Assembly: GCF_006345805.1 (NCBI RefSeq)
Contig: NC_043016.1
Span: 20,770,001-20,834,000, forward strand
Origin: Octopus sinensis
Lineage: Eukaryota
Length of the DNA: 64,000 bases
Direction: 5' to 3'
Part shown: piece after piece, positions 5,868 to 46,460 of the stretch
How the letters are laid out: each line of letters opens with the position of its first letter
How positions within the stretch are numbered: the stretch's first letter is position 1
Program-made: the position numbers and the translations under genes
Notes under the pieces: model-generated
The model's database searches: none
What the model was told of the DNA's origin: nothing
Seen by the model: the letters and a program-made list of their open reading frames with translations, nothing else

Positions 5868-6010
5868 AGTGAGAATATCAAAAAACAAAGACGATGACAG
5901 GTTTGTAAAAAACAGATGTATTAGTTTAACACTCGAGAAGTGAGACATTTCGAGCCTATGCTCTTCAACAGAAAGGATAACAGAAATAACAGGGAGAGAA
6001 AATGGAAAAG
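5620..6010. mobile_element. Two Penelope-like terminal-repeat fragments in opposite orientation, each with a decayed hammerhead core
   Basis: Plus strand 5682-5708: CCGACGA A GAGC TCC GCTT TAAACGT. Minus strand 5944-5971: CTGTTGA A GAGC ATAG GCTC GAAA TGTC. Confidence 0.35.
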
Positions 6011-18545: not shown

Positions 18546-18576
<31 letters not shown>

Positions 18577-19439
18577 TCAGACACACACATATATACATAC
18601 ACACACACACACACGTGCGCATATATATATATATATACATACATACAAGCATGCACACACAAATTTTAAGACACTACATAGAAAGCAGTTCTGGAAGATT
18701 TCATGTCTAAGTAAATTGATATACATTCAAAGAAGAAGTCAACAATTTAACCAGTGGCAGTATTTTTCTAATGTTTCTCATTTTTATATTATTTTCTTTC
18801 TGTTATTTTATACGGAAATTTTTAATGAAAGAAACCAACAATAAATTTAAATGTGTTGGAAGAGGAGAGAAAAAAACAGAACAAATTTTTTTTCTCTGAA
18901 TATACTCTTATAATTAATCTACAAAGAGTTCCATATTTTCGAGCATACATCATCATCATCATCACTCTGCAAAAAAAAAAAAAATTGCAGCTAACCCTGA
19001 AAACTTCAGCTGAATGTCACACATTTTCATGTTTAGGAACCATGGAAATTTAGACTAACATCCTTTAGTAAACTATTAGGCTAACTTACAATACTTCCCT
19101 TAACACTACCAAATATCACCACTGATCTCCACCATCACCTGTATTGGCCATCTTTAATAACATTAACCAAGTCTGTCCAAAACTTGATCTTCAGCATATA
19201 AAGTGCAATGGGGACATTTGGGGAAAATTTTGGGTGGGAAAAAATACACCTTATATTGTCAGAAAATACTATATTTTCCATCTAAGAAACACAAAACCGT
19301 TAGATTCACTTCAACATTTAAATTTAATTTGCCAAAATATTTTCGGCACTTTGAGACCACGACCTGTTCACTGACAAAATTCCGTGCTGCATCTCGAGAT
19401 ATAAACAGTGCATCTTCGAAATCGATCAATGGAAATTGC

Positions 19440-22150: not shown

Positions 22151-22163
22151 AGTGCATGTGTAC

Positions 22164-26670: not shown

Positions 26671-29600
26671 ATGTCTCATTGCCTTCTCCAAGGTAAGCGC
26701 TTCTATGGGCGTGAATGGGCCTATGCAAAGATCCTCAGCTCACTTGAACGCCATGAAGGGGCAATATCTTCTTCATCTGTTGTAGTTGCCCATAGTAACA
26801 ATGAAATTGAATCTGTGCACCATCCAGGAGGAGAACATGCCCTGACAACAGCAGCGGCAGCTGCCCCAGGAGGTGGTGTGTTAGTTACTGGGGGAGCTGG
26901 GTGTGGAAAGTCTGCACTGCTCTGTGAACTGGTGTGGCCAGCTGGTGGTGCCACAACAGCTACAGGATCGAACAGTGATAGTGGCAGAGACCGAGATGGC
27001 TGGGTCATGGTTTCAAACTCTACTGTAAGCAATGTTGGTATTGGTGGTGTTGTTTATGGTTCTGGGATCAGACCTGGTGTCGGATTTGGCTCTAATGATG
27101 GTGATAGTGGTATTGGATCCACTCGAGACAGAGATAGAGACAGGCATGGACGGGTTGCAGTTTCAAATCCACCTTTAAGTAGTTCTGTTGCTTGTGTTTC
27201 TGGGACCAGACCAGGTGTTGTTAATGTTGCTGTTGGGGGTGGCTCCAGTGCTAGGTTTGGTTCCAATGATGGTGATAGTGGTATTGGAAACAGTAGATGT
27301 AAAGATAGAGATACTCAGGTCACAGTTTCAAATTCTGGTCCCATTGTTGGAGGTGTTGGTAATGTCATTTGTCATCCTGGATTTGGCTCTAACGATGAAG
27401 ACAGTGGTACTGGATCCACAAGAAATAAGGATAGCCGTATCACAGTTGCTGGTGGAGGTGTTATCCGTGGTCCTGGGATTCGATCGGGTGTTGGATTCAG
27501 CTCCCCTGATGGTGATAGCGGAACTGGACCAAGTAGAAATAAAGAAACAGGTACTGGGATTCCTGTTTCAAATCCAGGTGATAGCAGTGGTGGCTATGGT
27601 GATGTCAGTTGTGGAATTGACAAAGACAGAGATGGCCACCGCATCACAGTTTCAAATTTAGCCACTGATGGTAGCAGTGGAGTTTGTGGAAAAGGAACAG
27701 AAGAAGGGCCAGGATGGCGACAACAGCAGCGAGGAGAAGGGAAAGAAGGAAGAAGAGATGGAAGTAGTGGAGGTGGAGGAGGACGTTTCAATCCCAGTTG
27801 TGTCCCTACCTTTGTCTGTGTCTCAGCTGATGCGGCTGCAAAGACAACAACAGGTGGTGATGATGAGCTCAGCATGAACACCACATCAACAAACAACAAC
27901 TATGATCACAGCATGAAGCTCACAACATCACCAAAAAATAACGATGACATTAGCATGAACGTCACATCACCAAACAACAATGATGACCTAAGCGTGAAAA
28001 CTACATCATACCCCAAAAACATTAATCTTTGCATGAACACCACGGCAGCAAACAACAATGATGATGAGGTCAGCATGAGTGCCACAACTTCACCAAAGAA
28101 CAATAATCCTACTGTGAACACCACTAATTCAACAAACAACAATGATGAACTCAGTATAAATGCTACACCAGGAAGGAATAACGATGGTGTTATTATGAAC
28201 ACCACATCACCAGCAGATGACTCCAAGTCCTCAGTGAAAGTAACCACTGTTACTTCCACTGAATCCAACACCATAAATAATGCAATTCACACTCAACCTC
28301 ACACACAAACTCAACCCCACAGTCACCCTTATCATGCTCAAACTCAAACTCACACTCAACCCAAGCCTCACATTCAGTCTCAGTCTCATGTGCAATCTCA
28401 GTCTCACACTCACGCGCATGCTCATCCTCGCCCTCACAGGTCATGTGTGCCTTCACGTTGCTGCTGCTGTCGGCGCTGGCGTTGTTATAACAACACTACC
28501 ACCACGACCAACAACAACAATGATAACAACAACAACAACAACAACAACAACAATAATGATGATGACGATAATGATGATGATGGTGTTGGTGATGGTGATG
28601 ATGTTGATGATGATATGACCAACCTGAATTCACTGCAGGATTCACCACCACCACTACCAGGAGCATCACTGTCCACACCAGTACTACCACAGCCTTCTAC
28701 TGTTTCCTCACCCCTTCCACTGAATGTGTGGCATGAACCTCTTGTCAATACTACTGCCGCTACTTCTGCGCTGTCCCCACCAGTGCCACCAACAACGGTC
28801 CGCACCACCTTAGCAGGCCCAGCAGCTGCATCGTCTCCCCTAGTGACAGGGTCTGTGGCCCCACCAGAGGAGGGCAAAATGAAAAGGCAGCATGCCTTAA
28901 ACAGGCGTGTGCTTGCTTATCACTTCTGCCAAGCACATGATGCACGCACACTGTCGCTCTCAGGCTTTGTGTTGAATGTCGTCGAGCAGATCAGGAGATC
29001 TAACCTGATTGAGGGCTATGCTGAGTTTCTTGAACATGCCATGGCAGAAATTGATGACAAGGTAACATGTTGTGCCAGTGGATGTAGTAGTTGTTGTTGT
29101 GGTGATGGTGGTGGTTGTAGTAGTTATAATTGTTATAGTACTGGTTGTGGATTTTGTTGCTATAGCAACAAAAATGACAATGGTGATGACAATGGTGGTG
29201 ATGACAGTAACAATGATGGAAACCATGATGATGAATATTATTACTGCAGTCATAATGTGAATGATGATGATGACAACGGTGAAGAGGAAAAAGTAGAAAA
29301 ACATGTTGATCAAAATGTTGCCAATCACTGTTGTCACAGAGATGAAGATAGAGATGATGACGATGGAAATGAAGAATCAGTCACCATAGCAACAAGAAAT
29401 AAAAATAAACAAATGGAAATGACAGCCCCAATGGCACAATATGGGCTTGGAGAACATGAACAACAGCAACAAGCAGCAGACAAAAAAGAAGTAGAAGATG
29501 ATGATGATGAGTTGTTATTTGGGACAAGAGATTATTTTGTTTTGGAGAATAGACATGATTATGACGATCAAGCTGCTGGGGTTGAGGTTAATACTGGAGT

Positions 29601-32600
29601 AGGGTTTGAAGAAACATCTAGAGCCAATGATTTTGCTGCTCTCGGGTTGTGTGTGACACGGAAGAATGGACATGGCCAAAACAACAGCCATTGGATGACA
29701 GGCAAGAGTGAGAGTAATGTCAAGAATGAGAAGTTAGGTAATAGTAAGACTGTGAAAGGAATGGTTAACACTGGTGTGGATCAAGTTCAGACAAAAGATG
29801 TTTTGATGCCACCAACACAAGATTCATCACATGAGGTGTTAGCATTGGCAGCAAAAGAGGCGCCTGGAAAGAAAATCAAGGTACAAGAAGAAAAAAAGAA
29901 AGAAATGGAGAAGAGGGATAAGTTGCATTTGAAGAAAGAAATAGAACAGGAAGATAAGAAAAAGATAAAGAGAGACAAGCAGCAGTTGAAGAAAGAGACC
30001 GAACTGGAGAAGAAAAAGATAAAGAAGGACAAAGTACAAGTAAAGAAAGAAGTGAATGAAAAGAAGGAAAAACTGCAAGTGAAGGAGAAAGAACAGGAAA
30101 AGAAAAAAAAAGTTGAGGAACAAGTGCTTGAAGACGACAACAATGACCGCCAACATCACCAAAATGATGAGGATGTTCTTAATCCTATTACGACATCTAA
30201 GGTGCCTCCCCATAATTCTGACAATATAGCGGTGACAACATTGACAGCATTGGAAGAGAAAATGGAGTTAAACAAGGAAGATAAGAATAAAAAGATGGAA
30301 AACAATACAGGACTGAGCCCAAGGAGGGAAAACATTAAGAAAAAATGCAGTAGTAGTAGTAGTAAAACTTGTCGTAATTGCTGTAGTGGAAGTTGTCTGG
30401 CAGTTCATTCTAACAACAATTCCAGCAACAGTGACAGGGACCAGAGCATATTGCCAACTGCTGCCTACCTTCGAGCAGAAACGATTGAGAGTGATGCAGT
30501 TGAGGCATTCCGCCGTCTTGTGCTGTTACCACTTTCCACAGTTGTATCACCACCGCCACATAGCCTCCTCTTGGTTGTCGATGCACTTGATGAATCTTTC
30601 TTGCGTCCTGGTTGGTTAGCACCTCCCGACGATGCTAGCGTTAGTGTTGTTGATGATGACAGGGACCATGTTAGAGATAACAGTTTGCAAGGCCAACAAC
30701 ATCATCACCGTCAACAGCAGCTGGGGCAGAGTAACAACAGCTGTTGTCAACACCACGGCAACTGTAATCATCATCGTCGTCATCGTCGTTGTCCTCCTCA
30801 TCAGCATCATCATCCTCATCATCATTATCCCCATCACAAACATGGAAATTGCCATCACCAAACTAACACCAACATTGGTGTTGTAGTGGAAGGGGGCAAA
30901 CATTCTTGTGATGACCCTAATCATCATTATCATCATCATCATCATCATCACCATTGTTCTTATAGTCATCATCATTATTGTGGCAATTGTCATCATGGTA
31001 ATGGTGATAATAATTATTATGGTGATGGTGTTGGTGGTGGTGGTGGTGGTGGTGGTGGTGGTAATGATCTTGAAAAAGAGAAGATAGTAGTTGTAAAAGA
31101 TGAAAACATTAACGATGATGTAAAGATGGTAGAGGATAAAGTGAAACAATTTCAAAATTTAGAGAACGAATATGATGCTTATAAGGGTGAGGATAGTTAT
31201 TTCGTTGATAGTAGAAAGAAGACCGAAGAGAACAAAAAGAAAGTAGCACTAGTGGATAATAAAGCGAAACATTTAGTAAAATTAGAGGATAATTATGCTG
31301 ATTGTAAGGTTGAAGGTTTTGATGTTTATAATGATAAAAAGAAATTAGAAGAGAAAAAGAAAGAGAAATTGAAGATGGTGGATCATAAAACAAAATGTTT
31401 GCAGAACATAGAGAATGACTATGATGATTATAAAGGTGAGAATTATTATTATGATGGAAGTTGGAAGAAAGAAAAAACTGAGAGAGAGGAGGAAATGAAA
31501 AACTTTAGAAAGGATGAGCATAAAGTGAAATGTTTGAAGAATGTAGAAAGTGATTATGATGTTTATAAAAGTGAAAATTTTGGAGATGGTGATGATGATG
31601 GTGGCGATAGTGGTGGTGATGATGATGATGATCGTGATCATGATGATGATCATGATGATAATGTTGTTGATAATGACTCTAAGAATAGAACAGAAAAGAT
31701 GAAAAAGAAGAGACTGAAAATGGTAGATCATAAAGCAAAATATTTACAGAATTTAGAGAAAGATTATGATGATCGTAAGGGTGAAGATTATTATTATGTT
31801 CGTAAGAAAAAAGATAGGAAAAAAACAGAGGAAGAAGAAGAAGACGAAATTAATAGGAAGCTAATTATGTTAGCAAATAAGACGAAATGCTTGACAAAAG
31901 TACAAGATTACTATGATGATAGTAAAGGTGATCATGATTATAATAATGATTATTTGTATGATGATGGGAAGAAGACAGAAGTAGACGATAAAAAAAAGAA
32001 ACAGAAAGGAAAGACATGGAATGATTATGGGAATTATAGTGGTGGTTATGATGATGACGATGATGATGGTGATGATGATGAGGAAGAGGATGATAATGGA
32101 AAGAAGACTAAAGATGAGAAAAAGCAGAAGACTGTGGAGGATAAATCAAAACATTTGCTAAATGTGGATGAGTATAATGATTATTATAACGATTATTGTG
32201 ATTATTATTATGATGACGATATTGATGATGATGAGGATGTTGATGATGATGTGGATGATGTTAGGATGAAGAGAGCAGAAGAGGATAAGAAGATAGAGAA
32301 AGAAGAAAAGAAAAGAAAACTGAAGTTGCAAATTGACCGGGACAAAGTGAAATGTTTGGCAAATGTAAAAGATGATTATAATGATGATGACAATTATTAT
32401 TATTTGGAGGATGAAAATAAGAAGGATAAAATAAAAAGGCTGGAGGAATTAGAAGTTAAGAAAAAAAAGCAAATGCTGAAGATTTACCAGGACAAAGTAA
32501 AGCATTTGCCAATTGCAAAAGATGGTTATGATGATGATAATGATGATTATTATTATGATAGTAAGAAAAAAGAAGAAATAAAGAAAGCAGAAGATCAAGA

Positions 32601-35600
32601 AAATAAGAAAAAGCAAAATCTAAAATTGGGCCAAGACAAAGTGAAGCGTTTGCCAAATGCAAAATATGATTATGATGATGAAGTTGATGAGTATTCTCAC
32701 TATAAATATCATGATGAAGAAGAGAAAAAGATGATAGAAGATGAAAAGAAAAAGAAAAGTCTGGCTGTGAACAAGGAGAAACCTAAGCATTTGCTAAATG
32801 CAAAAGAGGATGAAGATTTTGATGAAAATGATGATTATTATTGTTATTATCATAATGAGGAACAGAAGAAAGCAGAAGATGAAGACATGAAAAAACTGAA
32901 GACAGGTAAGTTCAAAGCAAAACATTTACTGATGGCAGAAAACGATGAAGACGATAGTTATTATTGTCATGATGATGATAATGATGATGATGATGATGAT
33001 GATGATGAAGACTATTATTATTATTGTTATAGAGATGGAGATGGGGAAAAGCAACAGCAGCACCATCATCTTCATAAATCCAACATGAGTCAGTTGGTAA
33101 ATCATGATGAAGAAAAATCAGAGACAAGCCCTTACCACCAACAAGAAAAACAACAAAAACAACAGCAGCAACACCATTTACAAAGGCCAAGTTCAGGTCA
33201 AGCAGTGAATTATTCTCATCAGAATGACAACAACAAAGAAGCAGAAACAGGAACAAAGGGTAGCCCTTCTCGGCGACAACAACGTCAACACTACTTATCT
33301 GGGATTCGAACATCAACCTCAGAATCAAAAGGCAAAACAACATCTGTTTTATCCAGGATTCAAAGCACAACTTCAACACCAGGAAAAACATCAAAAAGTA
33401 GCGGGACTCGAGTGTCAACTTCAGAAACACAGACAAAATCAAAAACAGCTTCTCCTTCTGCTTCTAGAATTCGAACTTCTGCAGCAAAGACAGCATCATC
33501 TCCATCAGTGACCAGGATTCAAAACCCAACATCAGTAACACCAGAAAAGACAAGAAAAACAAAAAGAACAGCCTCTCCACCTGTTGCCCCTGGTATTCAA
33601 ATCTCATCATCACAAACAACAACTAAAACAACAGCAACATATACTGTGCCTGGGATTCAAAAACCAATCTCAAAACAACAAACTACAGAAAGCACAGCTA
33701 CGTCATCCACACCTCCAATGCCCGGAATTCAGGCTTCTCCTTCAACAACAATACCTACACCCAATCAAACTATTAGTACAATTGCTGAGCTACTAGCTGC
33801 CACACGATCACTGTTTCCCGATTGGTTATTCCTTCTTTGCTCAGCACGTGAGCATTGCAAACCTGTGACAAAACTCTTTGCTGGTTCTGGTCTACGTCGT
33901 ATTGCACTCGACGATCTCCGCCGCTCACATGTAGTGCGTGATGTTCAGCGATACATCCTGTGCCGGTTAGATGCTGAGCCAGCTTTACGGCGCCATCTCA
34001 GCCGGCAGGCGGCACACACACTCAACCAACTACACATCAAGAGCAATGGCTGCATGCTGTACCTAGAGACAGTGCTTGATGGAGTTGCCGATGGCTCAGT
34101 GAGTCTGGCTGAAGTGCGACACATTCCACCTACACTTAATGGCCTCTACCTGTGGCTCTGCCAGCGTCGCTTTGCCCATGCTCCACGTCGCTTTGCTGAA
34201 GCACGCCCTCTGCTTGATGCTGTACTTGCAGCTGCTGCTGCTGCAGCACGACCTCTCACCATTGACCAGCTCTATTTGTGTGCTGTTGTACGTGATGCCC
34301 ATCTCACTCGCCATGACTTTGAGCGTCGGCTTGCTTCATTGTCTCGTCTGCTTGTTGGTATTCGTGTGGGAGAAGAGGGTAGTGTAGATGTTCTGCAAGA
34401 AGTCATACATCAACAGGTGCGGGGATCCACTGGCAGTCTAGAAGAAAATGGGCATCGTGGCCTAGAGCCTTGGCCCACCAGAATGGTAGGCCGAACTGGT
34501 TTGGCAGAATGTGGGCGTGGACTCTTAAAATCTCGTGCTGCCCAGTTAAGGAGACTTGGCAGTTTGGAGGATGTTGGGCGTGACCGCAAGGAACCTAGAA
34601 TCACTCAGCCAGCAGAGATTGGCAATCTGGAAAATGTGAAGCATAGCCATACAGAACCTAGCTTTGCTAAGCTCAGAAGTGTTGGTGTCCAAGAAGAGAA
34701 TGGGCATGATCACATACCACCCAATACCGTCCATACCCATCTAAGAGGTATAGACAGCCTTGAAGATGAGGAGCCAAGTTTGAAGGAATCTGGGCATGGT
34801 GACACCAAACTTCCTCTTGCTCAAATGGCAAGTCATATGCCAAAGTCTACCACCACTGATGCCGTAACTATTCCCTCTTACTCTAGTTATTCTACTACCT
34901 CCTGCCAACCCTTCTGCAATTTTTGTTCTCATCATTCTTGTTCTTCATGTGCTTGTTCTAACATTGCACCTTGCTTCAGCACTACCAATACTACTACTAC
35001 AAGACCTGCTACTTCTGTGCCGACAGCATCTCCTAGTCATCATTATTGTCACAATCATTACAGTTATCATCCTTGTCATCATAATCATCGCAAGAGCTAT
35101 CAGCATTGTCATTGTTGTCAGCATTTCAGCAAATTGCCTTCATCATCGAGTTTCTGGTCTTCACCATGGTCATCATGGTCAGCACTCAATCTAAATCTGA
35201 CTTTCAACAGTGATGGTCAAGTATCATCTAGTCTTGGCTCTTTGTCTGGGTCAGTAATAAGAGGAGATTGGAGAGCAGCTGTAGCGAGAGGAGATAGAGA
35301 AGGTAGATTGGGGGAGGTGGTTGTATCGTCACGGGGAGAAGAAGCTGGAGTGGGAGAATTAAATGGTAGAGGAGCTGGAAGAGGTATGGGAAGATTAGGA
35401 GAAAGTAATAGAAGAGGAGAAAGTAGAAGGCTAACATCATCAGTGATGGCTGCTCCACATCGACGACAACACCACTACCATGAAGTACAACAGCAACAAT
35501 ATCATCAAAATCACCAAAAGCAATACCACCCTGACCAACACCATCACGTCCCTTTATGTCAAAGTAATAAATCCAATCAGCATCTCTCCTCAGCACAGTT

Positions 35601-36864
35601 ATATGAAAGTTCACCAGCATGCATCTTTTTCCATCACAGCTTTGCTGAATGGCTTCTTGATGTGAAACACTGCACACCAAGGTTTCTGTGTTCAGCTGGT
35701 GAAGGTCATGGAGCACTTGCTCTGGCCATGATGGCTTCAACATCACTCATGATTCCTAGTAAATGTCCGTCTCTGGTGCCAAACAATGGCCAGTTAGTTA
35801 AAAATATTAATGGTAGCAGATGTTGGAGAAAGACAGATGTAGGACAATACCATCAATCAGCCCGGAGTTGTGGTCATAATCGTGGTTGGCTTACTGCAGC
35901 CGAGGTGCAGGAACTTGGCTGGCATCTTGTTCAAGCCAAGTTTCCTCCTTTGGGAATGGCAACAACATCAACAACAACAACAGTAAATGTTTCCACCAGT
36001 GGTGTTGCACGTTCTCCAATGGTCACCACCACCAACACTGTTACAGCCACTGCAACGACCTCTCTCCCATACCTGCTGAATCAAACTACCAGCATGCTAG
36101 CTGGACAGGGTTCAACCTCTGCTAATACAGCCGATACTGTTCTTGCCCCACCCCCACCTTGTCATGACATTATTTCCCCATCCGTCCATAAGGGAATCCT
36201 TACCACTGCAAGTCCTATGACAACTACTATTGCAGAAGCCAAACCAAAACCGACAGCAATAACTACATCAAAACAACACCGCCTTCTACACCTCAAGCAA
36301 CAATATCAACATCAACACCAACATTACACCCAACAATTACAACAGCAACCAAATTCATTGCAGGGTCACATGACTCACCATGAGCATCTTGTGCTCTGGC
36401 TGCTTGCATCAGGTATCAACCTGGAAAACTGTTTACGAATAGGAATTCCAGCAGACCAGAGATTGCTGCATCTTCTCGTAGATGCAGGAGCAACAGCCAC
36501 AAGGTCTACCCCTGACAACACATCTGACAGTGACTTTGACCACTGCTCCTGCAATCATGTTGCAACTCATTTTGCAGTTGAGACTCACTATCATAGTGAC
36601 GACAACAAAAATACCTGTACTGATAGGACTGTTGACATCGAACACAGGACTCATTACCTTGATAGTGACACACCTTTCAATGACAGTCATTACATGGATG
36701 ATGATGCCACATGTGCAGCTGTTATTGATGAAGCCATCAACGATGTCACCTCTACCAAAGGAAGATCCGATATCAGAATTGATGCAGGTAGTTTTCAGAA
36801 ATTATCCAACAGACCTGTACACTATGCTGGAGATCATCAAGAAAATGGAAAAATTCCTGGAAAG
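26671..36864 (+). CDS. ANKRD50: ANKRD50 orthologue, coding exon 1 (3,398 codons): N-terminal P-loop/NACHT-like domain fragmented by low-complexity inserts
   Basis: Blocks match recalled vertebrate ANKRD50 in order: LLQGKRFYGREW; Walker A GGAGCGKS (26890-26913) + ALLCELVWP; VLAYHFCQAHD; EAFRRLVLLPL; Walker B LLLVVDALDE; LFPDWLFLLCSAR; LDDLRRSHVVRDVQRYIL; LNQLHIKSNGCMLYLE; TLNGLYLWLCQR; FHHSFAEWLLDVKHCT; LLVDAGA. Phase-0 donor AAG|gtaagc after 36864. Upstream acceptor (T)n-gcag at 26393. Confidence 0.92.
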
Positions 36865-37573
36865 GTAAGCAAAAATTTTCATTTCCATACTTATGTATGA
36901 GGCAGTCCCTTTATGTGTAACATTCCTCTCTTTGAACTTGAAGATCTGTTGTTATTTCATATTCAATACCATCTTGTTTTCCTTCTCTTCTTCTTGTCCT
37001 TTTCAATTTGTTGTAAATTGTTTATAATATTTGCTTATAACAAGGCAATCAGCTGGTAGAATCATTAGCACACTAACTAAAATGCTTAGTAACATTTCAC
37101 CTGTCTTCACATTCTGAGTTCAAATTTTGCCAAGGTCAACATTGCATTTCATCTTTTGGGGTTGATGTAATTGATTTATACCCACCCCAAAATTGTTTGG
37201 CCTTGTGCCAAAATTTGAAATCAATATTTGCTTATAAATTGTATATTAGATTCCAACTACTTTTACATTGTTTTCAAAGCTAATTATTTTTTGGTTTACA
37301 AACTTTTTAAAATTATAAAATAAAAACTACATATATATATATATATATAAGCACAGGTGTGGCTATGTGGTAAGAAGTTAACTTTCCAATCACATGGTTT
37401 TGAGTTCAGCCTCACTGCAAGGCACCTTAGGCAAGTGTCTTCTACTAAATGTCCAGCCTTGTGAGTGGATTTAGTAGAAGGAAACTGAAAGAAACCCATT
37501 ATATATGTGTGTTTGTGTGTGTATGTATTTATATATATGTATGTGTATGTGCATGTATATATAAATGTATATG

Positions 37574-37611
<38 letters not shown>

Positions 37612-38669
37612 TGTGTGTGTAGAATTGTAAGGCAATGACAAGTGACCAACACCTTTGGAGATATGCCATGCTTGAGCAGACCCAGCATGTCAAATGAGAC
37701 TGTAGTTATGGCCAATGCCAGTGTCGCATAACTGGCCCATTTGAAAAAGCACCCTTTAATCGTTGGGCAATATGCTGTGCTTGTGAAGATCTGTTGAACT
37801 GAGTGACTTGCACCCATGCTGGTGGCATGTAAAATGTACCATATGAGCATGACCGACACCAGTGCTGCCTGACTGGCACCTATGCCAGTGACATGTAAAA
37901 CACATCATTTGAGTGTGGGTAATGCCAGTGCCACCTGACTGGCACTTGTGACAGTGGGATGTAAAAAGCACCATTTTGAGTATGGTCGATGCCAGTGCTG
38001 CCTAACTGGCTTCTCTACTGGTGGCACATAAAAGCATCCACTATACTCTCAGAGTGGTTGGCATTAGGAAGATCATCTAGCTGTAGAAACTTTGCCAAAT
38101 CAGATTGGAGCCTAATGCAGCCTCCTGTTTTATCAGTTCTCAGTCAAACCATCCAACCTATGCCAGCATAGAAAGCAAATGTTAAACGATGATGATGACG
38201 ACAATGATATATATATATATATACATACCGATGTGTGTGTTTTTATTTGTGTTTGTCCCCCACAGTTGCTTGACAATTGATATTGGTTTGTTTATGTCTC
38301 TGAAACCTACTGGTTCAGCAAGGGACTGATAGGATAAGTACCAGATAAGTACTGACATCAATTCATTCAGCTAAAACCCTTCAAGGTGGTGCCTCATCAA
38401 GGCCCCAGTCAAATGACTGAAACAAGTAAAAGAATAAAAAATATTATCATCATCATTTAATGTCTACTTTCCAATGCTTTCATGGATCAGATTGAATTTG
38501 TTGAAGTAAATTTTTCTAAAACTCGATGTCCTCCCTGTCACGAACCCTCACCTTTTACCATGACCAAACATATTTTTCTACAGAAACATGAAAGCAAACA
38601 ACAATGCTTGTATTAAGGTGATTTACATTTACAATCATTACATGATGTCAAAACAAGGGTACATATATA

Positions 38670-39262
38670 TGAGGTGCATTCAAAAAGTATTTGACTTTAT
38701 TTTTACCTGCCAAAACTAATGCCGTGAGGCAAAGTCCTTTGGATGGAAGGTGATGCCACCCTTCCTACACATGCATGAAAATTTTTGTGCCAGTAGGCCA
38801 CCTCAGTTCCCAACAGTTACACCTAGAGCACAGATGTGTTGTGCATGCTCATCAGATTTTTGTTTACATGCAAGATGACTGAACCCATTGACCAGAGACC
38901 ATAAATCCATGTCTCATCACCAATGATGATAGTCTTCATGAAGTCTGGATCATGGTTTTGCACAGTCCAGCACCCTCTGCATACACAAATTCTCCATTGA
39001 AATGGAACACACTGACTGAGTGCTTATTCTCACTTTATGAGCAGTTTCTTGGGTTGTTATGTGACAGTCTTCCATGACTATTTGCTGAACCTTCTCAATC
39101 ACATCCTCGTTTGGGCTTGTGGATGGCCTGTCTGAATGAGCCTCACTCTTCAATGAAGCACAGCCATGTTTGAAACAGCTGTACAACTCCTTTATCTGAA
39201 TGTTTCCCATGGCATCATTGCCAAAGCCCTGCTGAATCTTCTGGATGCTTTGAATTGTATGA
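38670..39262. mobile_element. Mariner fragment with an internal inversion
   Basis: Plus strand TA|TGAGGTGCATTCAAAAAG TIR through ATG MTEPIDQR (38875-38898), then minus-strand transposase ...GNDAMG..RPSTS..IEKVQQIV..DPDFMKTIIIGDETWIYG (39262 down to 38899). Confidence 0.75.
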
Positions 39263-40058
39263 GTGAATATAAGTACATGTTATCATAAATGTTCTTGTTT
39301 GATGGTCTATAGGTTAGCAGTAATTTCTCTTTCAACATCAGGAAATGTGTCTTGACTACACTATGCTGATAACCCTTAATCTAGCCTCTCTTACTTTCTC
39401 CTCCTCCCTATTTCTTTCTCTCTGTCTTCCTCTTATCTCTTATCTCTGACCATCTATTTAAAGAAATTATTTAATGTGACACTGTCCATTGATTGCTTTA
39501 TCAACCATAGGCCTATGAAATCTGGCTAAACCTCAATGTGTTTTCATTTTCTTTGTTGATGCCAAAATGAGAGAGTCAGTTTATATTCCACATCTTAATA
39601 TTTTTTCTCTGAACCAAATTTTATATTTTAATTCACCTGAAGAAAACGTTTATTTTTTCATGATGTAATCAAATTATTCATCAATAAAAAAAATACATCT
39701 GAAAGAGCTGTAGTGAATCTTTAATTCATCTATGCTCTTTCTTTGTGTAAACACTTCACCCGGAACCTTCTTCATGTTCAATCTGGAACTTACATTGGAT
39801 CATGAAACAGCATGTTGGTATGCATGGGTATATAATTTAATGTACATGTATATCTATATGTTTGTGTATATTGATGTGTTCATATACAAGTATATGTAAG
39901 TGTATGAATATGTCCATATATGCATGGGTATATGCAAGCATGTTTATATATGGTATATACACAGATGTGAAGATCTCATCCCTTACTTAGTGTTCTTAAT
40001 ATTAAAATACCTTGATTCTAATGAACCCTACAGATAATTAATTAATTATATATATATA

Positions 40059-40442
40059 ATATTAATAGTTATTGCCAAGCTAATATGGCAGTCCAGAAAT
40101 ATAGGACAAATGCTGCCGTTGATTAGCTCCAAGAGGCCATCACCTCTAGCTAGCTATGTGACACACAAACATTTGAACAGGGGAGGTCAGCCACTTCCCC
40201 TTGCTGGTCAGGTATCTGCAGACTAGTTTCAGGGTATTTACCCCTTATCAATGTAGAGCGGCCGAACCCAGCAAGCATCGCTACCGACCATCTGTTTGAA
40301 GGATTATTTACCTAAATTCAGTGGACACAGGTTCATGAGTCACATAGCTAGCTAGAGGCGATAGCCTTTTGGAGCTAATCGGCAGCAGCATTCGTCCTAT
40401 ATTTCTGGACTGCCATATTAGCTTGGTGATAACTGTTAATAT
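40059..40442. repeat. Foldback element: ~104-bp inverted arms around a ~175-bp spacer carrying a hammerhead motif
   Basis: 40059-40162 is the near-perfect reverse complement of 40339-40442. Confidence 0.9.
40215..40257 (-). ncRNA. Minimal type I hammerhead-like motif with U3/A8 core variant
   Basis: Minus strand reads TCTACA TTGATAA GGGGT AAAT ACCCT GAAA CTAGT C TGCAGA: palindromic stem III ACTAGT, GTC triplet, stem I 5 of 6 pairs. Confidence 0.55.
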
Positions 40443-40476
40443 CCAGTACCGCTTCTTTTCTGATATATGTCTTATT

Positions 40477-40522
<46 letters not shown>

Positions 40523-40658
40523 TAAATATTAGGGAATAAATCCAAATTTACAGGGAAAAAATCAGATTTAGGATTAAATCGATTTTATAGTAAAATATTA
40601 TAAAATATTATTCGAGACAAAACCACTATTTTGCAAAATAGTGGTTTTGTCTCGAATA

Positions 40659-40706
<48 letters not shown>

Positions 40707-40865
40707 TATGCATATATATATGTGTGTGTGTGTGTATGTATATAGTTCATAGATGAGATCCAAAGATTCTCCATATGTACATACATACATACATACAGAC
40801 AGACAGACAGAGAACAATGGTATATAAGTGTGCACACTCCTGCAATATTCTCTTTTCTTTTTCAG

Positions 40866-42702
40866 TATGAAAAACCTGTATCAAACACTCCACCAACAAT
40901 CATGATCACAAGCACCATCGCTCCAGTAATGTAAGCATGTCACCTCACAGCCAAAGTGAAAGCTCTCCTCACAGTGTTGTCCTAGATGAAATACCTAGCA
41001 CAGTGGCACCAACTTCCCAATCACCCACCTTAGCAACCCCGACTATATCATCCATTCGTAATCGTGACAACAACAACAACAATGATGATAATGATGATGT
41101 TGATGATGATGGTTTCAGTGGTGTCAGCGATAGCAAAAACAACCTCGCCTGCACCAATATTAGTCCCACCACTGCCACCAATGTCAATGTACCTTGTGAT
41201 ATAGAAGATGAAGCAAAAGTAGAAGATGATCCCATCTCCCTTGCAAATAATGATGCTGAAGAAGATTTCATATACGAGCATCGGCTGAATGCAACTCTGG
41301 AGAGACTTCGCCAACTTCGCAGCAGTGGTGAAGCGATGGAAAGTATAGGGACAACTGATGCAGAAAATGAAGCTGCAGACCTTTCTGCCATGCTGCATGA
41401 ATGCTCGGCACGTGGAGATGCTAAAGCTACTGTTGAACTACTTGCCCTAGGAGCCAATCCTTGCATTTCAGATGTTTACGGCCAGACTGCACTAAATATA
41501 GCTGCCCGTCAGGGACATCTGCAGTGGTGGAAGTGCTTCTGGGTTCACCTCAAGCTCCAGAGCTCACTGATGCAGCTGATAATGATGGCTGGACACCTCT
41601 CCGTTCTGCTGCCTGGGGTGGCCACACTGGTGTTGTTGAAGCTTTATTAGCTGCTGGTGCCCAGGTTGACCGTTGTGATGCTGGTGGAAGAACAGCATTA
41701 CGTGCTGCTGCATGGGGTGGCCGAGAATCTGCTGTCCGTTGTCTCCTTGCACATCATGCTGATGTGAACCGCTGCGACAGCGAGGGACGAACTGCTCTCA
41801 TTGCTGCTGCATACATGGGACATGCTTCCATTGTAGAACATCTCCTTGATGTTGGTGCATCTGTAGACCATGAAGATGCTGATGGCCGAACTGCCCTCTC
41901 TGTGGCTGCTTCACTTTGTGGCACAGGTTTTGTTGCATTCGTTTCTCCTGGAACAGTCAACCAGGATGCCGATGAGTGTGAATTTGATACTCAGCTTGGG
42001 AATGTAAATATTCGGGATGATGATGAAGACAATGATGATGGTACAAGGGGTGGTTTAGAGGCAGGAACAAGGGGGAAAAAGAAATACCCCACTGTCAATG
42101 ACAATGATCTTGGCACAGAGGGAGAAATAGTGGATGATATAAGCAAACTAGAGAGACAAAAGGAAGGACGAGCAAGTGCATTCAGCCAACAGCAAGGACA
42201 TGATCAAAGTTACCCACCCCAGAACGTTTCCTCTGCTGCCATCAGCAATGGCATGGCACAAGAAGAGCAACAGCAACAGCAATACCAGCATCAAAACCAT
42301 GATGCAGTCGTAGCATTGCTGCTTGCCCGGGGTGCATTTGTTGACCACAGAGACCTTGATGGTGCCACTCCTTTGCTGGTAGCTGCTCATGAGGGTCGCG
42401 AAGAAGCATGTGAGCTGCTTTTAGAATGGGATGCAGACGTTGATGCTGCCGACACAGCTGGACGTACACCACTGCTAGCAGCTGCAGCAGCTGGCCATGC
42501 AGGTGTGGTTCGTCAGTTGCTTTACTGGAATGCTGCAGTTGATGCCATTGACGGGGAAGGACGCACTGTGCTGAGCGTGGCTGCTGCCCAAGGTGATGCA
42601 GATGTTGTGGGGCTTCTACTGGAGCGAGGACTGGATGAAATGCATAAAGATAATGCTGGGTGGACTCCTTTACACATGGCTGCATACGAAGGACATAGAA
42701 AG
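40866..42702 (+). CDS. ANKRD50: ANKRD50 coding exon 2 (ankyrin repeats); two apparent 1-nt deletions at ~40870-40874 and ~41518
   Basis: Acceptor tcttttctttttcag at 40865; donor AAG|gtgaga after 42702. Ankyrin repeats [82 protein letters not shown] are spread over ORFs 40937-41650 and 41461-42714. The 5' boundary is less certain. Confidence 0.85.
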
Positions 42703-44345
42703 GTGAGAGACTGACTCATTCTTTTCATTTTTCTATTTTAACACCTACTATTTGTGTTGGTGGTGCCATTGTCAGTTTTGATTTGATTGTTTGAGTCATT
42801 GTTGCTGTTTCTGTTGGTGGTGCTATTGTTACTTACATTTGTCAGAACTCCCACCATTTACTTAATTTAAAGTACTTGAATATTGAATAGTAAGTATATT
42901 TTATATTTAGGAGACTGTATTGTGATTTTTTCTTGGTTGGAGATCACTTAATCCAGTAGGTACAGAGTCAATGACGGCTGGTTAGGGATAGGTTTCTAGG
43001 TAAGAAAAAAGATTATGCATATTTAGTGTTAGTGTGTCTGTCATGGCTGTGAACTGGTGTAGATAAGTTAGGTGTTGGGGGATGATTTGGACTTAGGTGG
43101 TATCTATAAAGACTGATACCTGGTATTAACTACAGGAATATTGAGACCATAGAATATGCAAACTATATATTAATTATAAACTAAGAGGTATGATATAAGC
43201 TTTAAAAGTTACCAGTATTAATGATAGTATACTTGAGCAAGTATTTTCCACTATAGCCTCGGTCGACCAAAGTCTTATTTGGTAGACAGAAACTGAAACT
43301 CGTTATGTGTGTGTGTGTGAGTGTGTGTGTGTGTGTATGTGTGTGTGTATGTGCCTCTGTGTCTGTGTTTGATCCTTAAACACTGCTTGACTACCGGTGT
43401 GAGTGTGTTTACGTTCCCAACAGAACAAGTACCTACCTTTAAAAAACAAGTGCTGGGATTGATTTGTTCGACGAAAATTCCTTAAATCAGTGCTCCAGCA
43501 TGGCCGTAGTCCCATGACTGAAACATATATATATTTTGCAGAATCAGTGTGGGATAAGTATAAAAGCCTAGAGGAGTAGTATACAAAAAGTTATTTAAGA
43601 TGATGGCTTTATATAAGATGTAGTTGTGATATCAGTGCCGGTGGCACGTAAAAAGCACCAACCGATCGTGGCCATTGCCAGCCTCGCCTGGCACCTGTGT
43701 CGGTGGCACGTAAAAAGCACCCACTACACTCACAGAGTGGTTGGCGTTAGGAAGGGCATCCAGCTGTAGAAACACTGCCAGATCAGACTGGAGCCTGGTG
43801 CAGCCTGCTGGCTTTCCAGACCCCAGTTGAACCGTCCAACCCATGCTAGCATGGAAAACGGACGTTAAACGATGATGATGATGTTTGATGTACAGAAACT
43901 GAGATGATCAAATAGCTGATAGTGTTTGGAGAGTGATAGAGGCATCAGAGTAGAGGAATCAGAAGTTGATCATAAAAAGACTTTGTTGTTGATGAACTTC
44001 AGGTAAAAGAGATAAAATGCAATGAATGGATTTTATAGCATGCATATATATTTCTGAATAAAGTTAGAATATAGAGTGTAATGTGAACATTATAGAGGTA
44101 TTAGAGACTGAGTGTTGAAGATTTATGACAAAGAATGTTTCTATGTTACTTGGTGGTGAATAGGGTTGAAGCTAGACCAATGTCTATGTATGCTTGTGAA
44201 GAGGAAGAAGGGTTGTTCAAAGTGTTTTTGTTTCATATATTTGATCTGTGCTTCATACATACATATGTGCATGTGAGTGTATCTGTGAGTGTATTTCATA
44301 TATATACATCTACACATATTTATCTATATCTCTATCTATTTGCAG

Positions 44346-46460
44346 GTCTGTGACATACTGATTGAACACGGTGCAAAAGTGAATGAGACAGACAATGACG
44401 GTCGCCATGCCCTCATACTAGCAGCCCAGGAGGGAAATCTCTCTGTAGTGGAGGGTCTGCTACGACATGGTGCTAGTGTGGATCAGCGTTCACATGATGG
44501 CAAGACAGCACTACGAGTCAGCTGCCTGGAAGGCCACGAAGCTGTAGCCAGCCTTTTGCTGCTTGGACACCCTTATCCTCCCGAACGAGGCTGTGGTCTC
44601 ATTTTGGTTGGTGGGGGAACTGGGGGTGTAGGAGAAGGTGGGGACGGTGAACCGTTTTCTTCATCCCCTCCATTGCCACCACAGCTAGGCGTTCGCAGGC
44701 GCCGGCGCCGTGGCTACAATCCTCAACCACAGCCTCACTCTCGAGCACTCCACTCACCAGAGACATTGTTGCTTCACTCTCCATCACACTCACCCACACA
44801 GTCACCCTCACACTCACAACTACACACACAGACACATTTGCAACTGGACCCAGATTCTGAATTACAGTCACCTTCACAGCATTCACATTCGACACCACCA
44901 CCACCAACACAAGTACAAGGAGCAGATGAAGAAACTGATACCTGCCGTAACTTCTCACCCTCACCACCACCACTGCCTCCACGTCACCGCTCTCCAACCC
45001 GAATTCGACATCGGAACTCTGCTTCTGCCATACCTTCTTCTGTTGCCAATTTTGCAGCAGACTCTACACCTTCTGCATTTATTGCTGCTACTAGTTCTGC
45101 TTTCAGTGCTGCTGTCACCTCTACTCCTTCCACTGCTATTGCAGCATCTGCTCCCATCCCCACCGTTGCCAACACTACATCTGTTGCTGTACCTCTTCCC
45201 ATCAAGAGAAAACAGCGGTTATGTGGTGGACCCATTAGCTACAGTGTTGGTGGTGGCGGTGGCGGACCATTGGGCTCAATTCTGGGAACTGGATGTTTGG
45301 CTGATCCAAATTACCATGATGCCGATGGCCGCTCAACATTGTATGTATTAGCACTGGAGAACCGTGTGCGCATGGCTGCCTTTTTGCTGGCCAATGGCGC
45401 TGACGTAGAAGGTGTTGACCCAGAAGGACGAACTGCATTACATGTGGCTGCCTGGCAAGGTCATGTTGACATGGTACGCCTACTTGCAGATGTGGGTGGT
45501 GCAGATTTAGACGCCGCCGACAATGAGCAACGCACACCACTGCAATCAGCCGCTTGGCGTGGCCACGCAGGTGTGGCGCGCGCGCTATTGAGACGTGGTG
45601 CTGCTGTAGACCGTGCTTGCAGCCAGGGAGCGACAGCATTGTGTGTAGCCTCACAAGAGGGACATGCTGGCGTTGTGCGCACTTTGCTTGCGCATGGAGC
45701 TGACCCATCACGTGCTGACCGCTACGGTCGGACACCCCTGCGTGTTGCACTGAAAAGTGGACATCGAGAGGTCTATGCACTGCTCATGCATGCTGCTCGG
45801 CATGGCCGGATAGGTCATACTGACCAGGCAGTACCCCCATTGCCAGGTGGTGGAGAACATGATGATGCAGAATATGGAGAATTTTATGACTATGATGACG
45901 CAGAAGCACATGCTGACAATGATTATGATGATTATTATGATTATTACAATGAAGAGAATGATGAAGAGGGCAAAGAGCGTCATCGCAGTCATACTGACTA
46001 CCAGTATCACCCCAATGATAACAGCAATGGTAGAAGACATGGCAGTTACATGGTGGAAGCGGCACCTGCAACACCTCAAGAACAACCAGCATCTTCATCA
46101 GCTTCACCAACACCACCACCACTCCCTCCACGATCTCGTGTTGATGTTGATGCTGCTGCTGATGCTGATAGAACTATGACAACTGATGCTGGTCCTACAG
46201 TAGTTGTTGATGCTGCTGATGTTAACAATGTTAAGTATGATAAGCATGTCCAGCAACATCGTCCTCACAAACAACAGCACCATCAGCATCAACGTCGCCT
46301 TCATCATAATAGTGACCACACTGGTGGTGGTGGTGGTGGTGGTGGCTCTAGCATTGCCCCTAGTGGAGGCAGCAACGATGTAAACTATCAGCGCCGCCAA
46401 AACCGCCATCGACATTCCCGACAACAGGAAGACAAGGTGCGCCGTTCACGTCAACAATAA
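44346..46460 (+). CDS. ANKRD50: ANKRD50 coding exon 3 (C-terminal ankyrin repeats and low-complexity tail), stop TAA
   Basis: Acceptor tttgcag at 44345, in frame with the exon 2 donor: GHRK|[10 protein letters not shown]. Repeats [56 protein letters not shown] are colinear with vertebrate ANKRD50. Confidence 0.9.

What the first reader, a model, noticed from the sequence alone, without database searches (positions are those of the whole stretch)
26671..46460. A ~4,700-aa ANKRD50, about three times the vertebrate length, with only three coding exons
Seen: 3,398 + ~613 + 704 codons. The NTPase domain is cut into about 7 blocks by inserts of roughly 640 aa (after ELVWP), 470 aa (after GYAEFL) and 1,050 aa (right after Walker B). 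Established: ANKRD50 is a retromer/SNX27-associated endosomal recycling factor of about 1,400 aa in human (from memory). Inference: lineage-specific inflation with disordered sequence at loop positions, retaining catalytic motifs. This could add scaffolding or condensate-forming behaviour.
Basis: partly seen in the sequence, partly recalled or inferred. Interest (0 to 1): 0.72.

Follow-up and report, generated by a model that had tools for sequence, protein, structure and literature searches.

The report
Giant octopod ANKRD50 with loop inserts
This is the octopus-lineage copy of the endosomal recycling factor ANKRD50, grown to about 4,700 codons by translated, mostly disordered inserts in surface loops, but in this assembly two one-base frame breaks interrupt its second exon.

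Summary
The observation largely holds. The gene has three coding exons.
- Exon 1 (26671-36864) is one open frame of exactly 3,398 codons.
- Exon 3 (44346-46460) has 704 codons.
- Exon 2 (40866-42702) is 1,837 nt, not a multiple of three, and changes frame twice relative to the intact Argonauta hians orthologue. So the window does not literally encode one 4,715-aa protein.

The core is ANKRD50. It is 55-62% identical to gastropod, bivalve, brachiopod, arthropod and vertebrate ANKRD50 (about 1,290-1,660 aa). It keeps 75 of 83 family-invariant residues, including Walker A, Walker B and the sensor-1 arginine.

Inserts of 34, 646, 477, 1,050, 421, 47, 140 and 120 aa all fall at loops of a confident model of the limpet orthologue. 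They are translated sequence, not introns:
- no in-frame stops, against roughly 200 expected from shuffles;
- collinear with a 4,525-aa Argonauta orthologue;
- dN/dS 0.23-0.31;
- 80 of 86 indels are multiples of three.

Insert 3 holds 12 tandem units of about 47 aa, predicted as isolated helices in low-confidence linkers. The inflation is shared by at least two octopods and absent from other molluscs. The state in squid and Nautilus could not be tested. Any scaffold or condensate function remains inference.

The parts
26671..36864 (+). Coding exon 1: 3,398 codons, start ATG, donor AAG|gtaagc. It encodes the whole STAND-type NTPase module (nucleotide-binding domain, lid, winged helix) split into 8 core blocks by inserts.
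   Evidence: collinear with Argonauta exon 1, a 3,214-codon open frame
26875..26946 (+). Core block aa 69-92 with Walker A (GGAGCGKS) and helix ELVWP. It is preceded by core block aa 1-34 (26671-26772, LLQGKRFYGREW motif) and a 34-aa insert (26773-26874).
26947..28884 (+). Insert 1, 646 aa, rich in S/G/N/T/D. It contains FGSNDGDSGIG...RDRDR repeats, 13-aa NNDD..SMNTT repeats (39/81-nt tandem repeat), CAA/GAT trinucleotide runs, and the fully conserved island HRSCVPS.CCCCRRWRCYNNT (28426-28497).
28885..29031 (+). Core block aa 739-787 (RVLAYHFCQAHD...GYAEFL), dN/dS 0.02.
29032..30462 (+). Insert 2, 477 aa, rich in K/E/D/N. It starts with a Cys-rich stretch, has a 57-nt tandem repeat (29896-30032), and a conserved island DELLFGTRDYFVLENRHDYDDQ (29497-29577).
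30463..30606 (+). Core block aa 1265-1312 with Walker B (LLLVVDALDES).
30607..33756 (+). Insert 3, 1,050 aa, placed in the loop straight after the Walker B strand. It has a His/Cys-rich start, poly-Gly, a repeat array and an S/T/P/K-rich end.
31090..32994 (+). Array of 12 tandem units of about 47 aa inside insert 3 (consensus ..KKKLK....K.K.L.N.E.DYDD.K.E..Y..). Charged-residue fraction is 0.53, tyrosine 8.6%, and charge is blocky (z = 7.5). Each unit is predicted as one isolated helix separated by low-confidence acidic/Tyr linkers.
33757..34359 (+). Core block aa 2363-2563: sensor-1 strand (FLLCSAR), AAA+ lid (Pfam AAA_lid_TANC1, aa 2414-2498) and the first part of the winged helix. It is 98% identical to Argonauta over aa 2401-2500, with dN/dS 0.04.
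34360..35622 (+). Insert 4, 421 aa, at the tip of the winged-helix beta-hairpin. It contains the conserved island LKSRAAQLRR.GSLED (34519-34572).
35623..36504 (+). Core blocks aa 2985-3025 (Pfam HTH_TANC1), 3073-3094 and 3235-3278, separated by insert 5 (47 aa, 35746-35886) and insert 6 (140 aa, 35953-36372).
36505..36864 (+). Expanded linker (120 aa) between the NTPase module and the ankyrin array, at the end of exon 1.
36865..40865 (+). Intron 1 (4.0 kb; 16 kb in Argonauta), with microsatellites and a 66-nt tandem repeat.
40866..42702 (+). Coding exon 2, 1,837 nt: a low-complexity linker, then ankyrin repeats with an insert of about 130 aa (roughly 41914-42297). It is read in three frames relative to Argonauta: frame 0 at the acceptor, frame 2 for 40871-41521, frame 1 for 41524-42702.
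40866..40873 (+). Frame break 1. A net -1 shift at the A-run just after the acceptor, within a 76-nt (25 codons + 1) length difference to Argonauta. Frame 0 then stops at 40932-40934.
41518..41524 (+). Frame break 2. One base fewer than Argonauta, inside the first full ankyrin repeat (ARQGHL / VVEVLL).
42703..44345 (+). Intron 2 (1.6 kb).
44346..46460 (+). Coding exon 3, 704 codons plus stop: ankyrin repeats, a P/S/T-rich insert of about 260 aa (roughly 44559-45333), and a low-complexity C-terminal tail of about 220 aa (roughly 45804-46457). dN/dS against Argonauta is 0.08.

Best explanation
The locus is the orthologue of ANKRD50 in an octopod-lineage cephalopod. ANKRD50 is a STAND-type (NACHT/Apaf-1-like) P-loop NTPase module fused to about 20 ankyrin repeats. 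In human cells it associates with retromer (VPS35) and is needed for SNX27-retromer recycling of cargo such as GLUT1.

In this lineage the three-coding-exon gene kept every core element but grew from about 1,400 to about 4,500-4,700 codons. The growth came from in-frame expansion at surface loops of the nucleotide-binding domain, the winged helix, the linker, two inter-repeat loops of the ankyrin array, and the C-terminal tail.

Shown:
- The inserts are protein-coding and under purifying selection.
- They predate the split from Argonauta.
- They grew partly by trinucleotide slippage and tandem duplication (units of 39, 57 and about 141 nt).
- They contain no known domain.
- They sit only where the predicted fold has loops.

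Inferred:
- The NTPase switch and ankyrin platform still work as in ordinary ANKRD50.
- The inserts act as long flexible, highly charged, multivalent appendages carrying a few conserved short motifs.

The two frame breaks in exon 2 are most likely consensus errors of the assembly, or a very recent haplotype-specific lesion. Everything downstream is still open and strongly constrained.
For: Family:
- The lid/winged-helix piece (aa 2380-2620) hits 282 proteins. All named ones are ANKRD50, at 51-62% identity.
- Pfam finds AAA_lid_TANC1 (54.6 bits) and HTH_TANC1 (67.7 bits) above their cut-offs, plus ankyrin families.
- 75 of 83 positions invariant in 50 ANKRD50s are kept, including Walker A Lys, both Walker B Asp and the sensor-1 Arg.
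- The AF2 model of the limpet orthologue (pLDDT 80.5) is closest to NLRP, NOD2 and Apaf-1.

Inserts are coding:
- 0 in-frame stops against about 200 expected.
- The Argonauta exon 1 is also open, for 3,214 codons, and collinear.
- dN/dS is 0.23-0.31 in inserts against 0.02-0.04 in the best core blocks.
- In a DNA alignment made without any frame information, 80 of 86 gaps are multiples of 3. Identity at codon positions 1/2/3 within the inserts is 0.71/0.74/0.59.
- No in-frame consensus donor/acceptor pair brackets any large insert.

Loop placement.

Lineage specificity: gastropod, bivalve, brachiopod and vertebrate orthologues are 1,366-1,426 aa.

Gene structure: the same three exons in Argonauta.

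Downstream constraint: dN/dS is 0.18, 0.10 and 0.08 for exon 2 part A, exon 2 part B and exon 3.

Human function: PMC4231307.
Against: - No transcript or peptide evidence was available for this species.
- As assembled, exon 2 is out of frame twice. Exon 1 has 51 homopolymers of 5 or more bases without a single frame error, so a uniform assembly-error model does not predict two errors within 650 nt.
- The Argonauta annotators spliced a 174-nt in-frame piece out of insert 3.
- The dN/dS values come from a protein-guided alignment at near-saturated dS (about 1.0-1.2), so they are approximate.
- Retention of NTPase activity and of retromer binding is inferred only from motif conservation.
Confidence: 0.8

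Rival explanations
1. The frame breaks in exon 2 are real. In the sequenced haplotype or species the gene makes a protein that ends 22 codons into exon 2 (the NTPase module with its inserts but no ankyrin repeats), or it is a very young pseudogene.
For: There are two independent -1 shifts within 650 nt. The rest of the gene shows an accurate consensus: 51 homopolymers of 5 or more bases in exon 1 and no frame error. The strong, conserved acceptor at 40865/40866 leads to a stop in every frame within 70 nt.
Against: All frames downstream of the breaks stay open for 217, 393 and 704 codons with dN/dS 0.08-0.18, so any lesion must be very recent. Both are single-base losses, the commonest long-read consensus error, and the first lies at an A-run 145 nt from a (TA)28 microsatellite. 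ANKRD50 is conserved across Bilateria.
Confidence: 0.2
2. Most inserts are removed from the mature mRNA as internal introns ('exitrons'), so the main protein is close to ordinary length and the giant ORF is only a minor isoform.
For: Every insert is necessarily a multiple of three. The Argonauta annotation contains one in-frame 174-nt GT-AG intron inside insert 3. Exon 1 contains 17 donor-like and 17 acceptor-like sites.
Against: The inserts have zero stops, 3n indels, a third-position excess of change and dN/dS of about 0.25 over dS of about 1.2, which is not expected of sequence that is usually spliced out. No in-frame donor/acceptor pair brackets an insert while sparing the core blocks. The Argonauta 'intron' has a purine-rich acceptor with no pyrimidine tract, and it removes one of the most conserved stretches of insert 3. 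Inserts 2-3 are strongly purine-rich on the coding strand.
Confidence: 0.07
3. The extra length is an assembly artefact: collapsed or expanded repeats, or foreign sequence joined into the gene.
For: The inserts contain microsatellite-like and tandem-repeat DNA.
Against: An independent assembly of another species (Argonauta hians, GCA_054771915.1) has the same inserts in the same order, at 40-68% amino-acid identity and in an equally open frame.
Confidence: 0.01

Closest known systems
ANKRD50 of other animals (human about 1,429 aa from memory; here Pecten 1,366, Biomphalaria 1,426, Lingula 1,423, Chiloscyllium 1,390 aa)
   Same: The N-terminal LLxGKRFYCREW motif, Walker A and B, sensor-1 Arg, TANC1-like lid and winged helix, and a collinear ankyrin array are all present. 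The lid region is 51-62% identical, and 75 of 83 invariant residues are kept.
   Different: It is 3.3 times longer. Eight inserts (34-1,050 aa) lie inside the NTPase module, two lie inside the ankyrin array, and the tail is longer. Pfam NACHT, AAA_16 and PF24883 models that hit ordinary orthologues no longer detect the split nucleotide-binding domain (against 23).
Argonauta hians 'uncharacterized protein LOC115222487' (4,525 aa, P0001)
   Same: It is the direct orthologue, with the same three coding exons, the same inserts in the same order, and a 12-unit repeat array. Identity is 52% in exon 1 and 77-85% in the ankyrin exons.
   Different: Its exon 2 is in one frame throughout. Its annotated model omits a 174-nt in-frame piece. 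Its introns are longer (16 kb and 3.3 kb). It is deposited without a family name.
Moderately inflated ANKRD50 in other lineages (Glossina fuscipes 2,237-2,259 aa; Cydia amplana 1,866 aa; trematodes 1,681-1,978 aa)
   Same: They are named ANKRD50 and carry inserts of 25-310 aa. Several map near the same loops, around limpet residues 28-36, 56-62, 97-110, 163 and 451-460.
   Different: The added sequence is several-fold smaller (about 450-850 aa against about 3,300 aa). There is no kilo-residue insert after Walker B. Insert sequences are unrelated, so the expansions are independent. These alignments are rough.
STAND NTPases with solved structures (NLRP3, NLRP7, NLRP9, NOD2, Apaf-1, CED-4)
   Same: The predicted core fold (nucleotide-binding domain, helical lid, winged helix) matches them best. 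Foldseek E-values are 1.5e-5 to 2e-4 at probability 1.00, with TM up to 0.39 to Apaf-1.
   Different: Sequence identity is only 11-13%. The effector and sensor parts differ (ankyrin repeats instead of LRR or WD40). Nothing here tests oligomerisation or signalling.

Membership tests
ANKRD50 (TANC1-like STAND NTPase plus ankyrin repeats) | P-loop NTPase core with Walker A GxxGxGK[ST], Walker B hhhhDxxDE and a sensor-1 arginine | tested here: met
   GGAGCGKS, LLLVVDALDES and FLLCSAR align with the family-invariant G40/G41/G43/G45/K46, D155/D158 and R197. The invariant S156 is Ala in both octopods.
ANKRD50 (TANC1-like STAND NTPase plus ankyrin repeats) | TANC1-like AAA+ lid and winged-helix domains after the nucleotide-binding domain | tested here: met
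   PF25520 scores 54.6 bits (cut-off 29.1) and PF25521 scores 67.7 bits (cut-off 27), both on exon 1.
ANKRD50 (TANC1-like STAND NTPase plus ankyrin repeats) | A long C-terminal ankyrin-repeat array collinear with other ANKRD50s, with no TPR domain (which would indicate TANC1/2) | tested here: met
   Ank_2, Ank and Ank_4 hits reach E = 2e-49 to 2e-59 in exons 2 and 3, with no TPR family reported. The Argonauta orthologue aligns repeat for repeat with six ANKRD50s. The window is 77-85% identical to it there.
ANKRD50 (TANC1-like STAND NTPase plus ankyrin repeats) | Closest relatives are ANKRD50 rather than TANC or other STAND proteins | tested here: met
   Every named hit among the best 120 is ANKRD50 or ANKRD50-like (or uncharacterised), at E = 1e-61 to 1e-52. 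Named hits down to 37% identity are still ANKRD50. No formal tree or reciprocal search was run.
ANKRD50 (TANC1-like STAND NTPase plus ankyrin repeats) | One uninterrupted coding sequence | tested here: not met
   Exon 2 is 1,837 nt with two -1 frame breaks relative to Argonauta. This concerns the integrity of this copy as assembled, not family assignment.
ANKRD50 (TANC1-like STAND NTPase plus ankyrin repeats) | Association with VPS35/retromer and a requirement for SNX27-retromer cargo recycling | not testable with these tools
   Known only for human ANKRD50 (PMC4231307).
STAND / NACHT-like NTPase fold | Three-layer nucleotide-binding domain, then a helical lid, then a winged helix | tested here: met
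   This was tested on the limpet orthologue, not the octopod protein. The AF2 model has pLDDT 80.5 and pTM 0.71. Its best PDB matches are NLRP7, NOD2, NLRP3, NLRP9 and Apaf-1.
Intrinsically disordered, low-complexity loop insertions | Located at loops of the parent fold, with no domain match, biased composition and low predicted order | tested here: met
   All insertion points map to non-helix, non-strand positions or helix ends. No Pfam family is found in the inserts. Composition is biased to D/K/E/N/S/G/T. Insert 3 has mean pLDDT 43 and pTM 0.18, although it contains 11 predicted isolated helices, and that alignment had only 2 sequences.

The most novel reading that the evidence does not exclude
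The inserts are not passive filler but new functional modules. Under this reading three elements turn a retromer accessory NTPase into a giant membrane-tethered multivalent scaffold, possibly condensate-forming, in octopod cells:
- a fully conserved CCCC-R-R-W-R-C cluster, a candidate lipid-anchor or metal site;
- His/Cys-rich stretches;
- a 12-unit array of lysine-rich helices alternating with Asp/Tyr-rich linkers.

The reading would also show that a STAND NTPase tolerates a 1,050-residue loop directly after Walker B.
Probability: 0.15. Interest if true: 0.6.

Novelty: new variant of a known kind. Interest (0 to 1): 0.4.

Why it matters
- It is an extreme natural case of a conserved molecular switch, a STAND NTPase, carrying kilo-residue inserts inside its catalytic domain under purifying selection. 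It maps which loops of this fold tolerate expansion, and several of them were also expanded independently in insects and flatworms.
- It is a practical warning for annotation. Domain models for the split nucleotide-binding domain fail, and the deposited Argonauta protein is labelled 'uncharacterized'. Gene predictors may also cut spurious in-frame introns in such exons.
- If the inserts prove functional, they would link endosomal recycling machinery to lineage-specific disordered scaffolds in cephalopods.
- Otherwise this is an ordinary gene with unusual padding.

Tried and rejected
- **Other cephalopod orthologues.** Three word-indexed protein searches (length ranges 1,875-5,966, 560-1,783 and 248-788 aa) and one exhaustive representative search found only Argonauta. 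The state in squid, cuttlefish and Nautilus stays unknown.
- **Source species and independent reads.** Exact look-ups of the window's own ORF products returned nothing, so the frame breaks could not be checked against other data.
- **Literature.** Searches for LOC115222487 and for ANKRD50 with octopus found no papers.
- **Solved structures.** A PDB sequence search with the lid domain found no relative.
- **RNA genes.** Rfam and tRNA scans of the whole window found nothing.
- **Rescue of frame break 1 by another splice site.** Only the AG at 40911-40912 is phase-compatible. It lacks a pyrimidine tract and lies downstream of a strong conserved acceptor, so I rejected it as the main route.
- **Rescue of frame break 2 by a small intron.** Homology to Argonauta is continuous across the site, so I rejected this.
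- **TANC1/2 identity.** Rejected: there is no TPR domain and all close relatives are ANKRD50.
- **Handling of the broken exon.** Exon pieces were searched and analysed separately.


Full report
**1. What is in the sequence**

The + strand carries an ATG-initiated ORF at 26671-36900 (3,409 codons).
- A strong acceptor (ttctcttttctttttcag|) opens exon 2 at 40866, and a donor AAG|gtgaga closes it at 42702.
- Exon 3 runs from 44346 (tttgcag|) to the stop at 46460, giving 704 codons.
- Pfam finds AAA_lid_TANC1 (aa 2414-2498) and HTH_TANC1 (aa 2982-3023) in exon 1. It finds strong ankyrin-repeat families in exons 2 and 3, and no other domain.

**2. Exon 2 is not intact**

Exon 2 is 1,837 nt, which is 612 codons plus 1 nt.
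- From the acceptor, frame 0 reads 22 codons and stops at 40932.
- tblastn with the Argonauta orthologue matches frame 2 from 40874 to 41521, then frame 1 from 41512 to 42720.
- At the DNA level the window differs from Argonauta by 76 nt (25 codons + 1) just after the acceptor. Frame-2 homology starts at 40871, right behind an A-run.
- The window also has one base fewer at 41518-41524, in the middle of an ankyrin repeat (ARQGHL / VVEVLL).
- Both are net -1 shifts.
- Each piece was searched and analysed separately.

**3. Identity**

- The uninterrupted core stretch (aa 2380-2620) finds 282 relatives of 560-1,783 aa. Every named one is ANKRD50 or ANKRD50-like, at 51-62% identity. Examples are Biomphalaria (1,426 aa), Pecten (1,366), Tegillarca (1,388), Mya (1,402), Lingula (1,423), sharks and amphibians (1,388-1,390), and insects and spiders.
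- An exhaustive search of 1.84 billion representatives gives the same picture. In ordinary members the lid starts near residue 185, against residue 2,380 here.
- Of 83 positions invariant in an alignment of 50 ANKRD50 proteins, 75 are kept. These include Walker A Gly/Lys, both Walker B Asp and the sensor-1 Arg. Seven of the eight changes are identical in Argonauta.
- No solved structure is related by sequence.
- An AF2 model of the Lottia orthologue (pLDDT 80.5, pTM 0.71) is closest to NLRP7, NOD2, NLRP3, NLRP9 and Apaf-1. The core is therefore a STAND-type NTPase module.

**4. The inserts**

Against six ordinary orthologues, exon 1 consists of 8 core blocks totalling 463 aa. They are separated by inserts of 34, 646, 477, 1,050, 421, 47, 140 and 120 aa. 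The ankyrin part carries two more inserts (about 130 and 260 aa) and a long tail.

Mapped onto the Lottia model, every insertion point lies in a loop or at a helix end:
- before the first strand;
- between the Walker A helix and the next helix;
- between helices at residues 110-116;
- in the low-confidence loop after the Walker B strand;
- at the tip of the winged-helix hairpin;
- in two inter-helix loops;
- in the linker to the ankyrin array.

**5. Are the inserts coding?**

Four lines of evidence say yes.
- In-frame stops are 0, whereas shuffles of each insert give 23-88 stops for the large ones. The other five frames carry tens to hundreds.
- The only long relative in the databases is the 4,525-aa Argonauta hians 'uncharacterized protein LOC115222487'. 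Its locus (L001) has the same three exons and an exon-1 ORF open for 3,214 codons. It aligns collinearly through every insert at 40-68% identity.
- dN/dS is 0.26, 0.28, 0.23 and 0.31 for inserts 1-4. It is 0.02-0.04 for the best core blocks, at dS of about 1.0-1.2.
- A DNA alignment made without any frame information has 80 of 86 gaps in multiples of three. Identity at codon positions 1/2/3 is 0.71/0.74/0.59 within the inserts.

A consensus splice-site scan finds donor-like and acceptor-like sites, but no in-frame pair that brackets any large insert while sparing the cores.

The 174-nt in-frame intron in the Argonauta annotation has a purine-rich acceptor. It also removes a stretch that is nearly identical at the nucleotide level in the window. 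I regard it as a probable annotation artefact, though an alternative isoform is not excluded.

**6. What the inserts are made of**

- Composition is biased: S/G/N/T in insert 1, K/E/D/N in insert 2, and D/K/E/Y in insert 3.
- Tandem-repeat DNA lies inside them. This includes 39/81-nt and 57-nt units and CAA, GAT, ATC and TGG triplet runs, which points to growth by slippage and tandem duplication.
- Insert 3 contains 12 tandem units of about 47 aa. Each has a lysine-rich stretch, a K.K[HC]L.N.E motif, then DYDD..G.DYYY. All 12 are present in the same order in Argonauta.
- That array has a charged-residue fraction of 0.53, 8.6% tyrosine, and charge blockiness 7.5 SD above shuffles.
- AF2 gives no compact fold for it (mean pLDDT 43, pTM 0.18). 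It predicts 11 isolated helices, roughly one per unit, with pLDDT 50-75, separated by low-confidence linkers. The alignment held only 2 sequences, so this is weak evidence.
- About 10% of insert residues lie in islands at least 87% identical between the two species. Examples are HRSCVPS.CCCCRRWRCYNNT, DELLFGTRDYFVLENRHDYDDQ, KSKHLLNVDEYNDYYNDYCDYYYDD and LKSRAAQLRR.GSLED. This is the usual pattern of a disordered region carrying short functional motifs.

**7. How it most likely works**

Established for the human protein: ANKRD50 co-purifies with VPS35, and its depletion phenocopies loss of SNX27-retromer in recycling GLUT1, MCT1, CD97 and TRAILR1 (PMC4231307).

Shown here: the octopod gene keeps the nucleotide-switch residues, the lid/winged-helix unit (98% identical between the two octopods over aa 2401-2500) and the ankyrin platform.

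Inferred: the same switch-plus-platform function is retained, and the inserts project from the surface as long, charged, multivalent appendages. Whether they add tethering, membrane anchoring or condensate behaviour is untested speculation.

**8. The frame breaks: error or real?**

For consensus error:
- Both are single-base losses.
- The first sits at an A-run 145 nt from a (TA)28 microsatellite.
- All downstream frames stay open for 217, 393 and 704 codons, with dN/dS of 0.18, 0.10 and 0.08.
- The gene is conserved across Bilateria.

For real lesions:
- Exon 1 has 51 homopolymers of 5 or more bases and no frame error.
- Two hits within 650 nt are unexpected under a uniform error rate.

My estimate is about 0.8 error and 0.2 real. 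If real, the lesions must be very recent. Only reads can decide.

**9. Scope and novelty**

The inflation is absent from gastropods, bivalves and all other phyla sampled. It is shared by the window's species and Argonauta, so it predates their split. No squid, cuttlefish or Nautilus sequence was in reach.

Smaller independent inflations exist in tsetse flies (2,237-2,259 aa), a moth (1,866 aa) and trematodes. Several of their inserts map near the same loops, though those alignments are rough.

The thing is therefore a member of a known family and an extreme variant of a recurring tendency. It is deposited for Argonauta without a family name, and I found no paper describing it.

**10. Surroundings**

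- Upstream lie transposon remnants: a DDE_3 transposase fragment at 1620-2180, and reverse-transcriptase fragments at 17486-18658 (-) and 22152-23569 (+).
- ORFs tested in intron 1 and downstream have no family match.
- The window contains no Rfam family or tRNA.

Noticed in passing
window 28447-28494, 32158-32220, 32803-32856, 35623-35673: Four stretches of 48-63 nt are at least 94% identical at the nucleotide level to Argonauta, although synonymous sites elsewhere differ at about 60% (uncorrected). Three lie inside inserts (CCCCRRWRC, DEYNDYYNDYCDYYYDD, DENDDYYCYYH). Constraint at synonymous sites might reflect an RNA-level function, for instance structure around editing sites in cephalopods, or simply AT-biased two-fold codons.
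   Followed up: partly
L001 8234-8407 (Argonauta hians locus): The deposited Argonauta gene model removes a 174-nt in-frame GT-AG 'intron' from the middle of insert 3. Its acceptor has no pyrimidine tract, and the removed piece is conserved and open in both species. It is probably an annotation artefact or a rare isoform.
   Followed up: partly
window 1620-2180 (+), 17486-18658 (-), 22152-23569 (+): Transposable-element remnants lie upstream of the gene: a DDE_3 transposase fragment (E = 1.9e-11) and two reverse-transcriptase (RVT_1) fragments (E = 1.3e-14 and 5.1e-30). The first RVT fragment also has a weak PHD-finger match.
   Followed up: partly
window 37804-38010 and 37499-37620, 40480-40721, 43306-43368: The introns hold a 66-nt tandem repeat (3.1 copies) and long TG, TA and TATGTG microsatellites. 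The (TA)n runs end 145 nt upstream of exon 2, where the first frame break lies.
   Followed up: no
window 38950-39210 (-): An 86-aa ORF in intron 1 looks by eye like the N-terminal helix-turn-helix part of a mariner-type transposase. Pfam gave no match at E <= 0.01, so this is unverified.
   Followed up: partly
proteins P0161/P0272 (Glossina), P0147 (Cydia), P0002 and P0198 (trematodes): ANKRD50 of tsetse flies, a moth and flukes also carries inserts of 25-310 aa in the NTPase module. Several map near the same loops that are inflated in octopods, which suggests recurrent expansion hot spots in this fold.
   Followed up: partly
window 26671-36864 and P0001: Pfam families that mark the nucleotide-binding domain of ordinary ANKRD50 (PF24883, PF05729 NACHT, PF13191 AAA_16) are not reported for either octopod protein, because the domain is split by inserts. 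Automatic annotation therefore misses the NTPase.
   Followed up: partly
window 26690-26698: A perfect donor-like site (CAAGGTAAGC, 10.98+ bits, as strong as the real donors) lies at codon 8 inside the conserved LLQGKRF motif. It is presumably unused.
   Followed up: no
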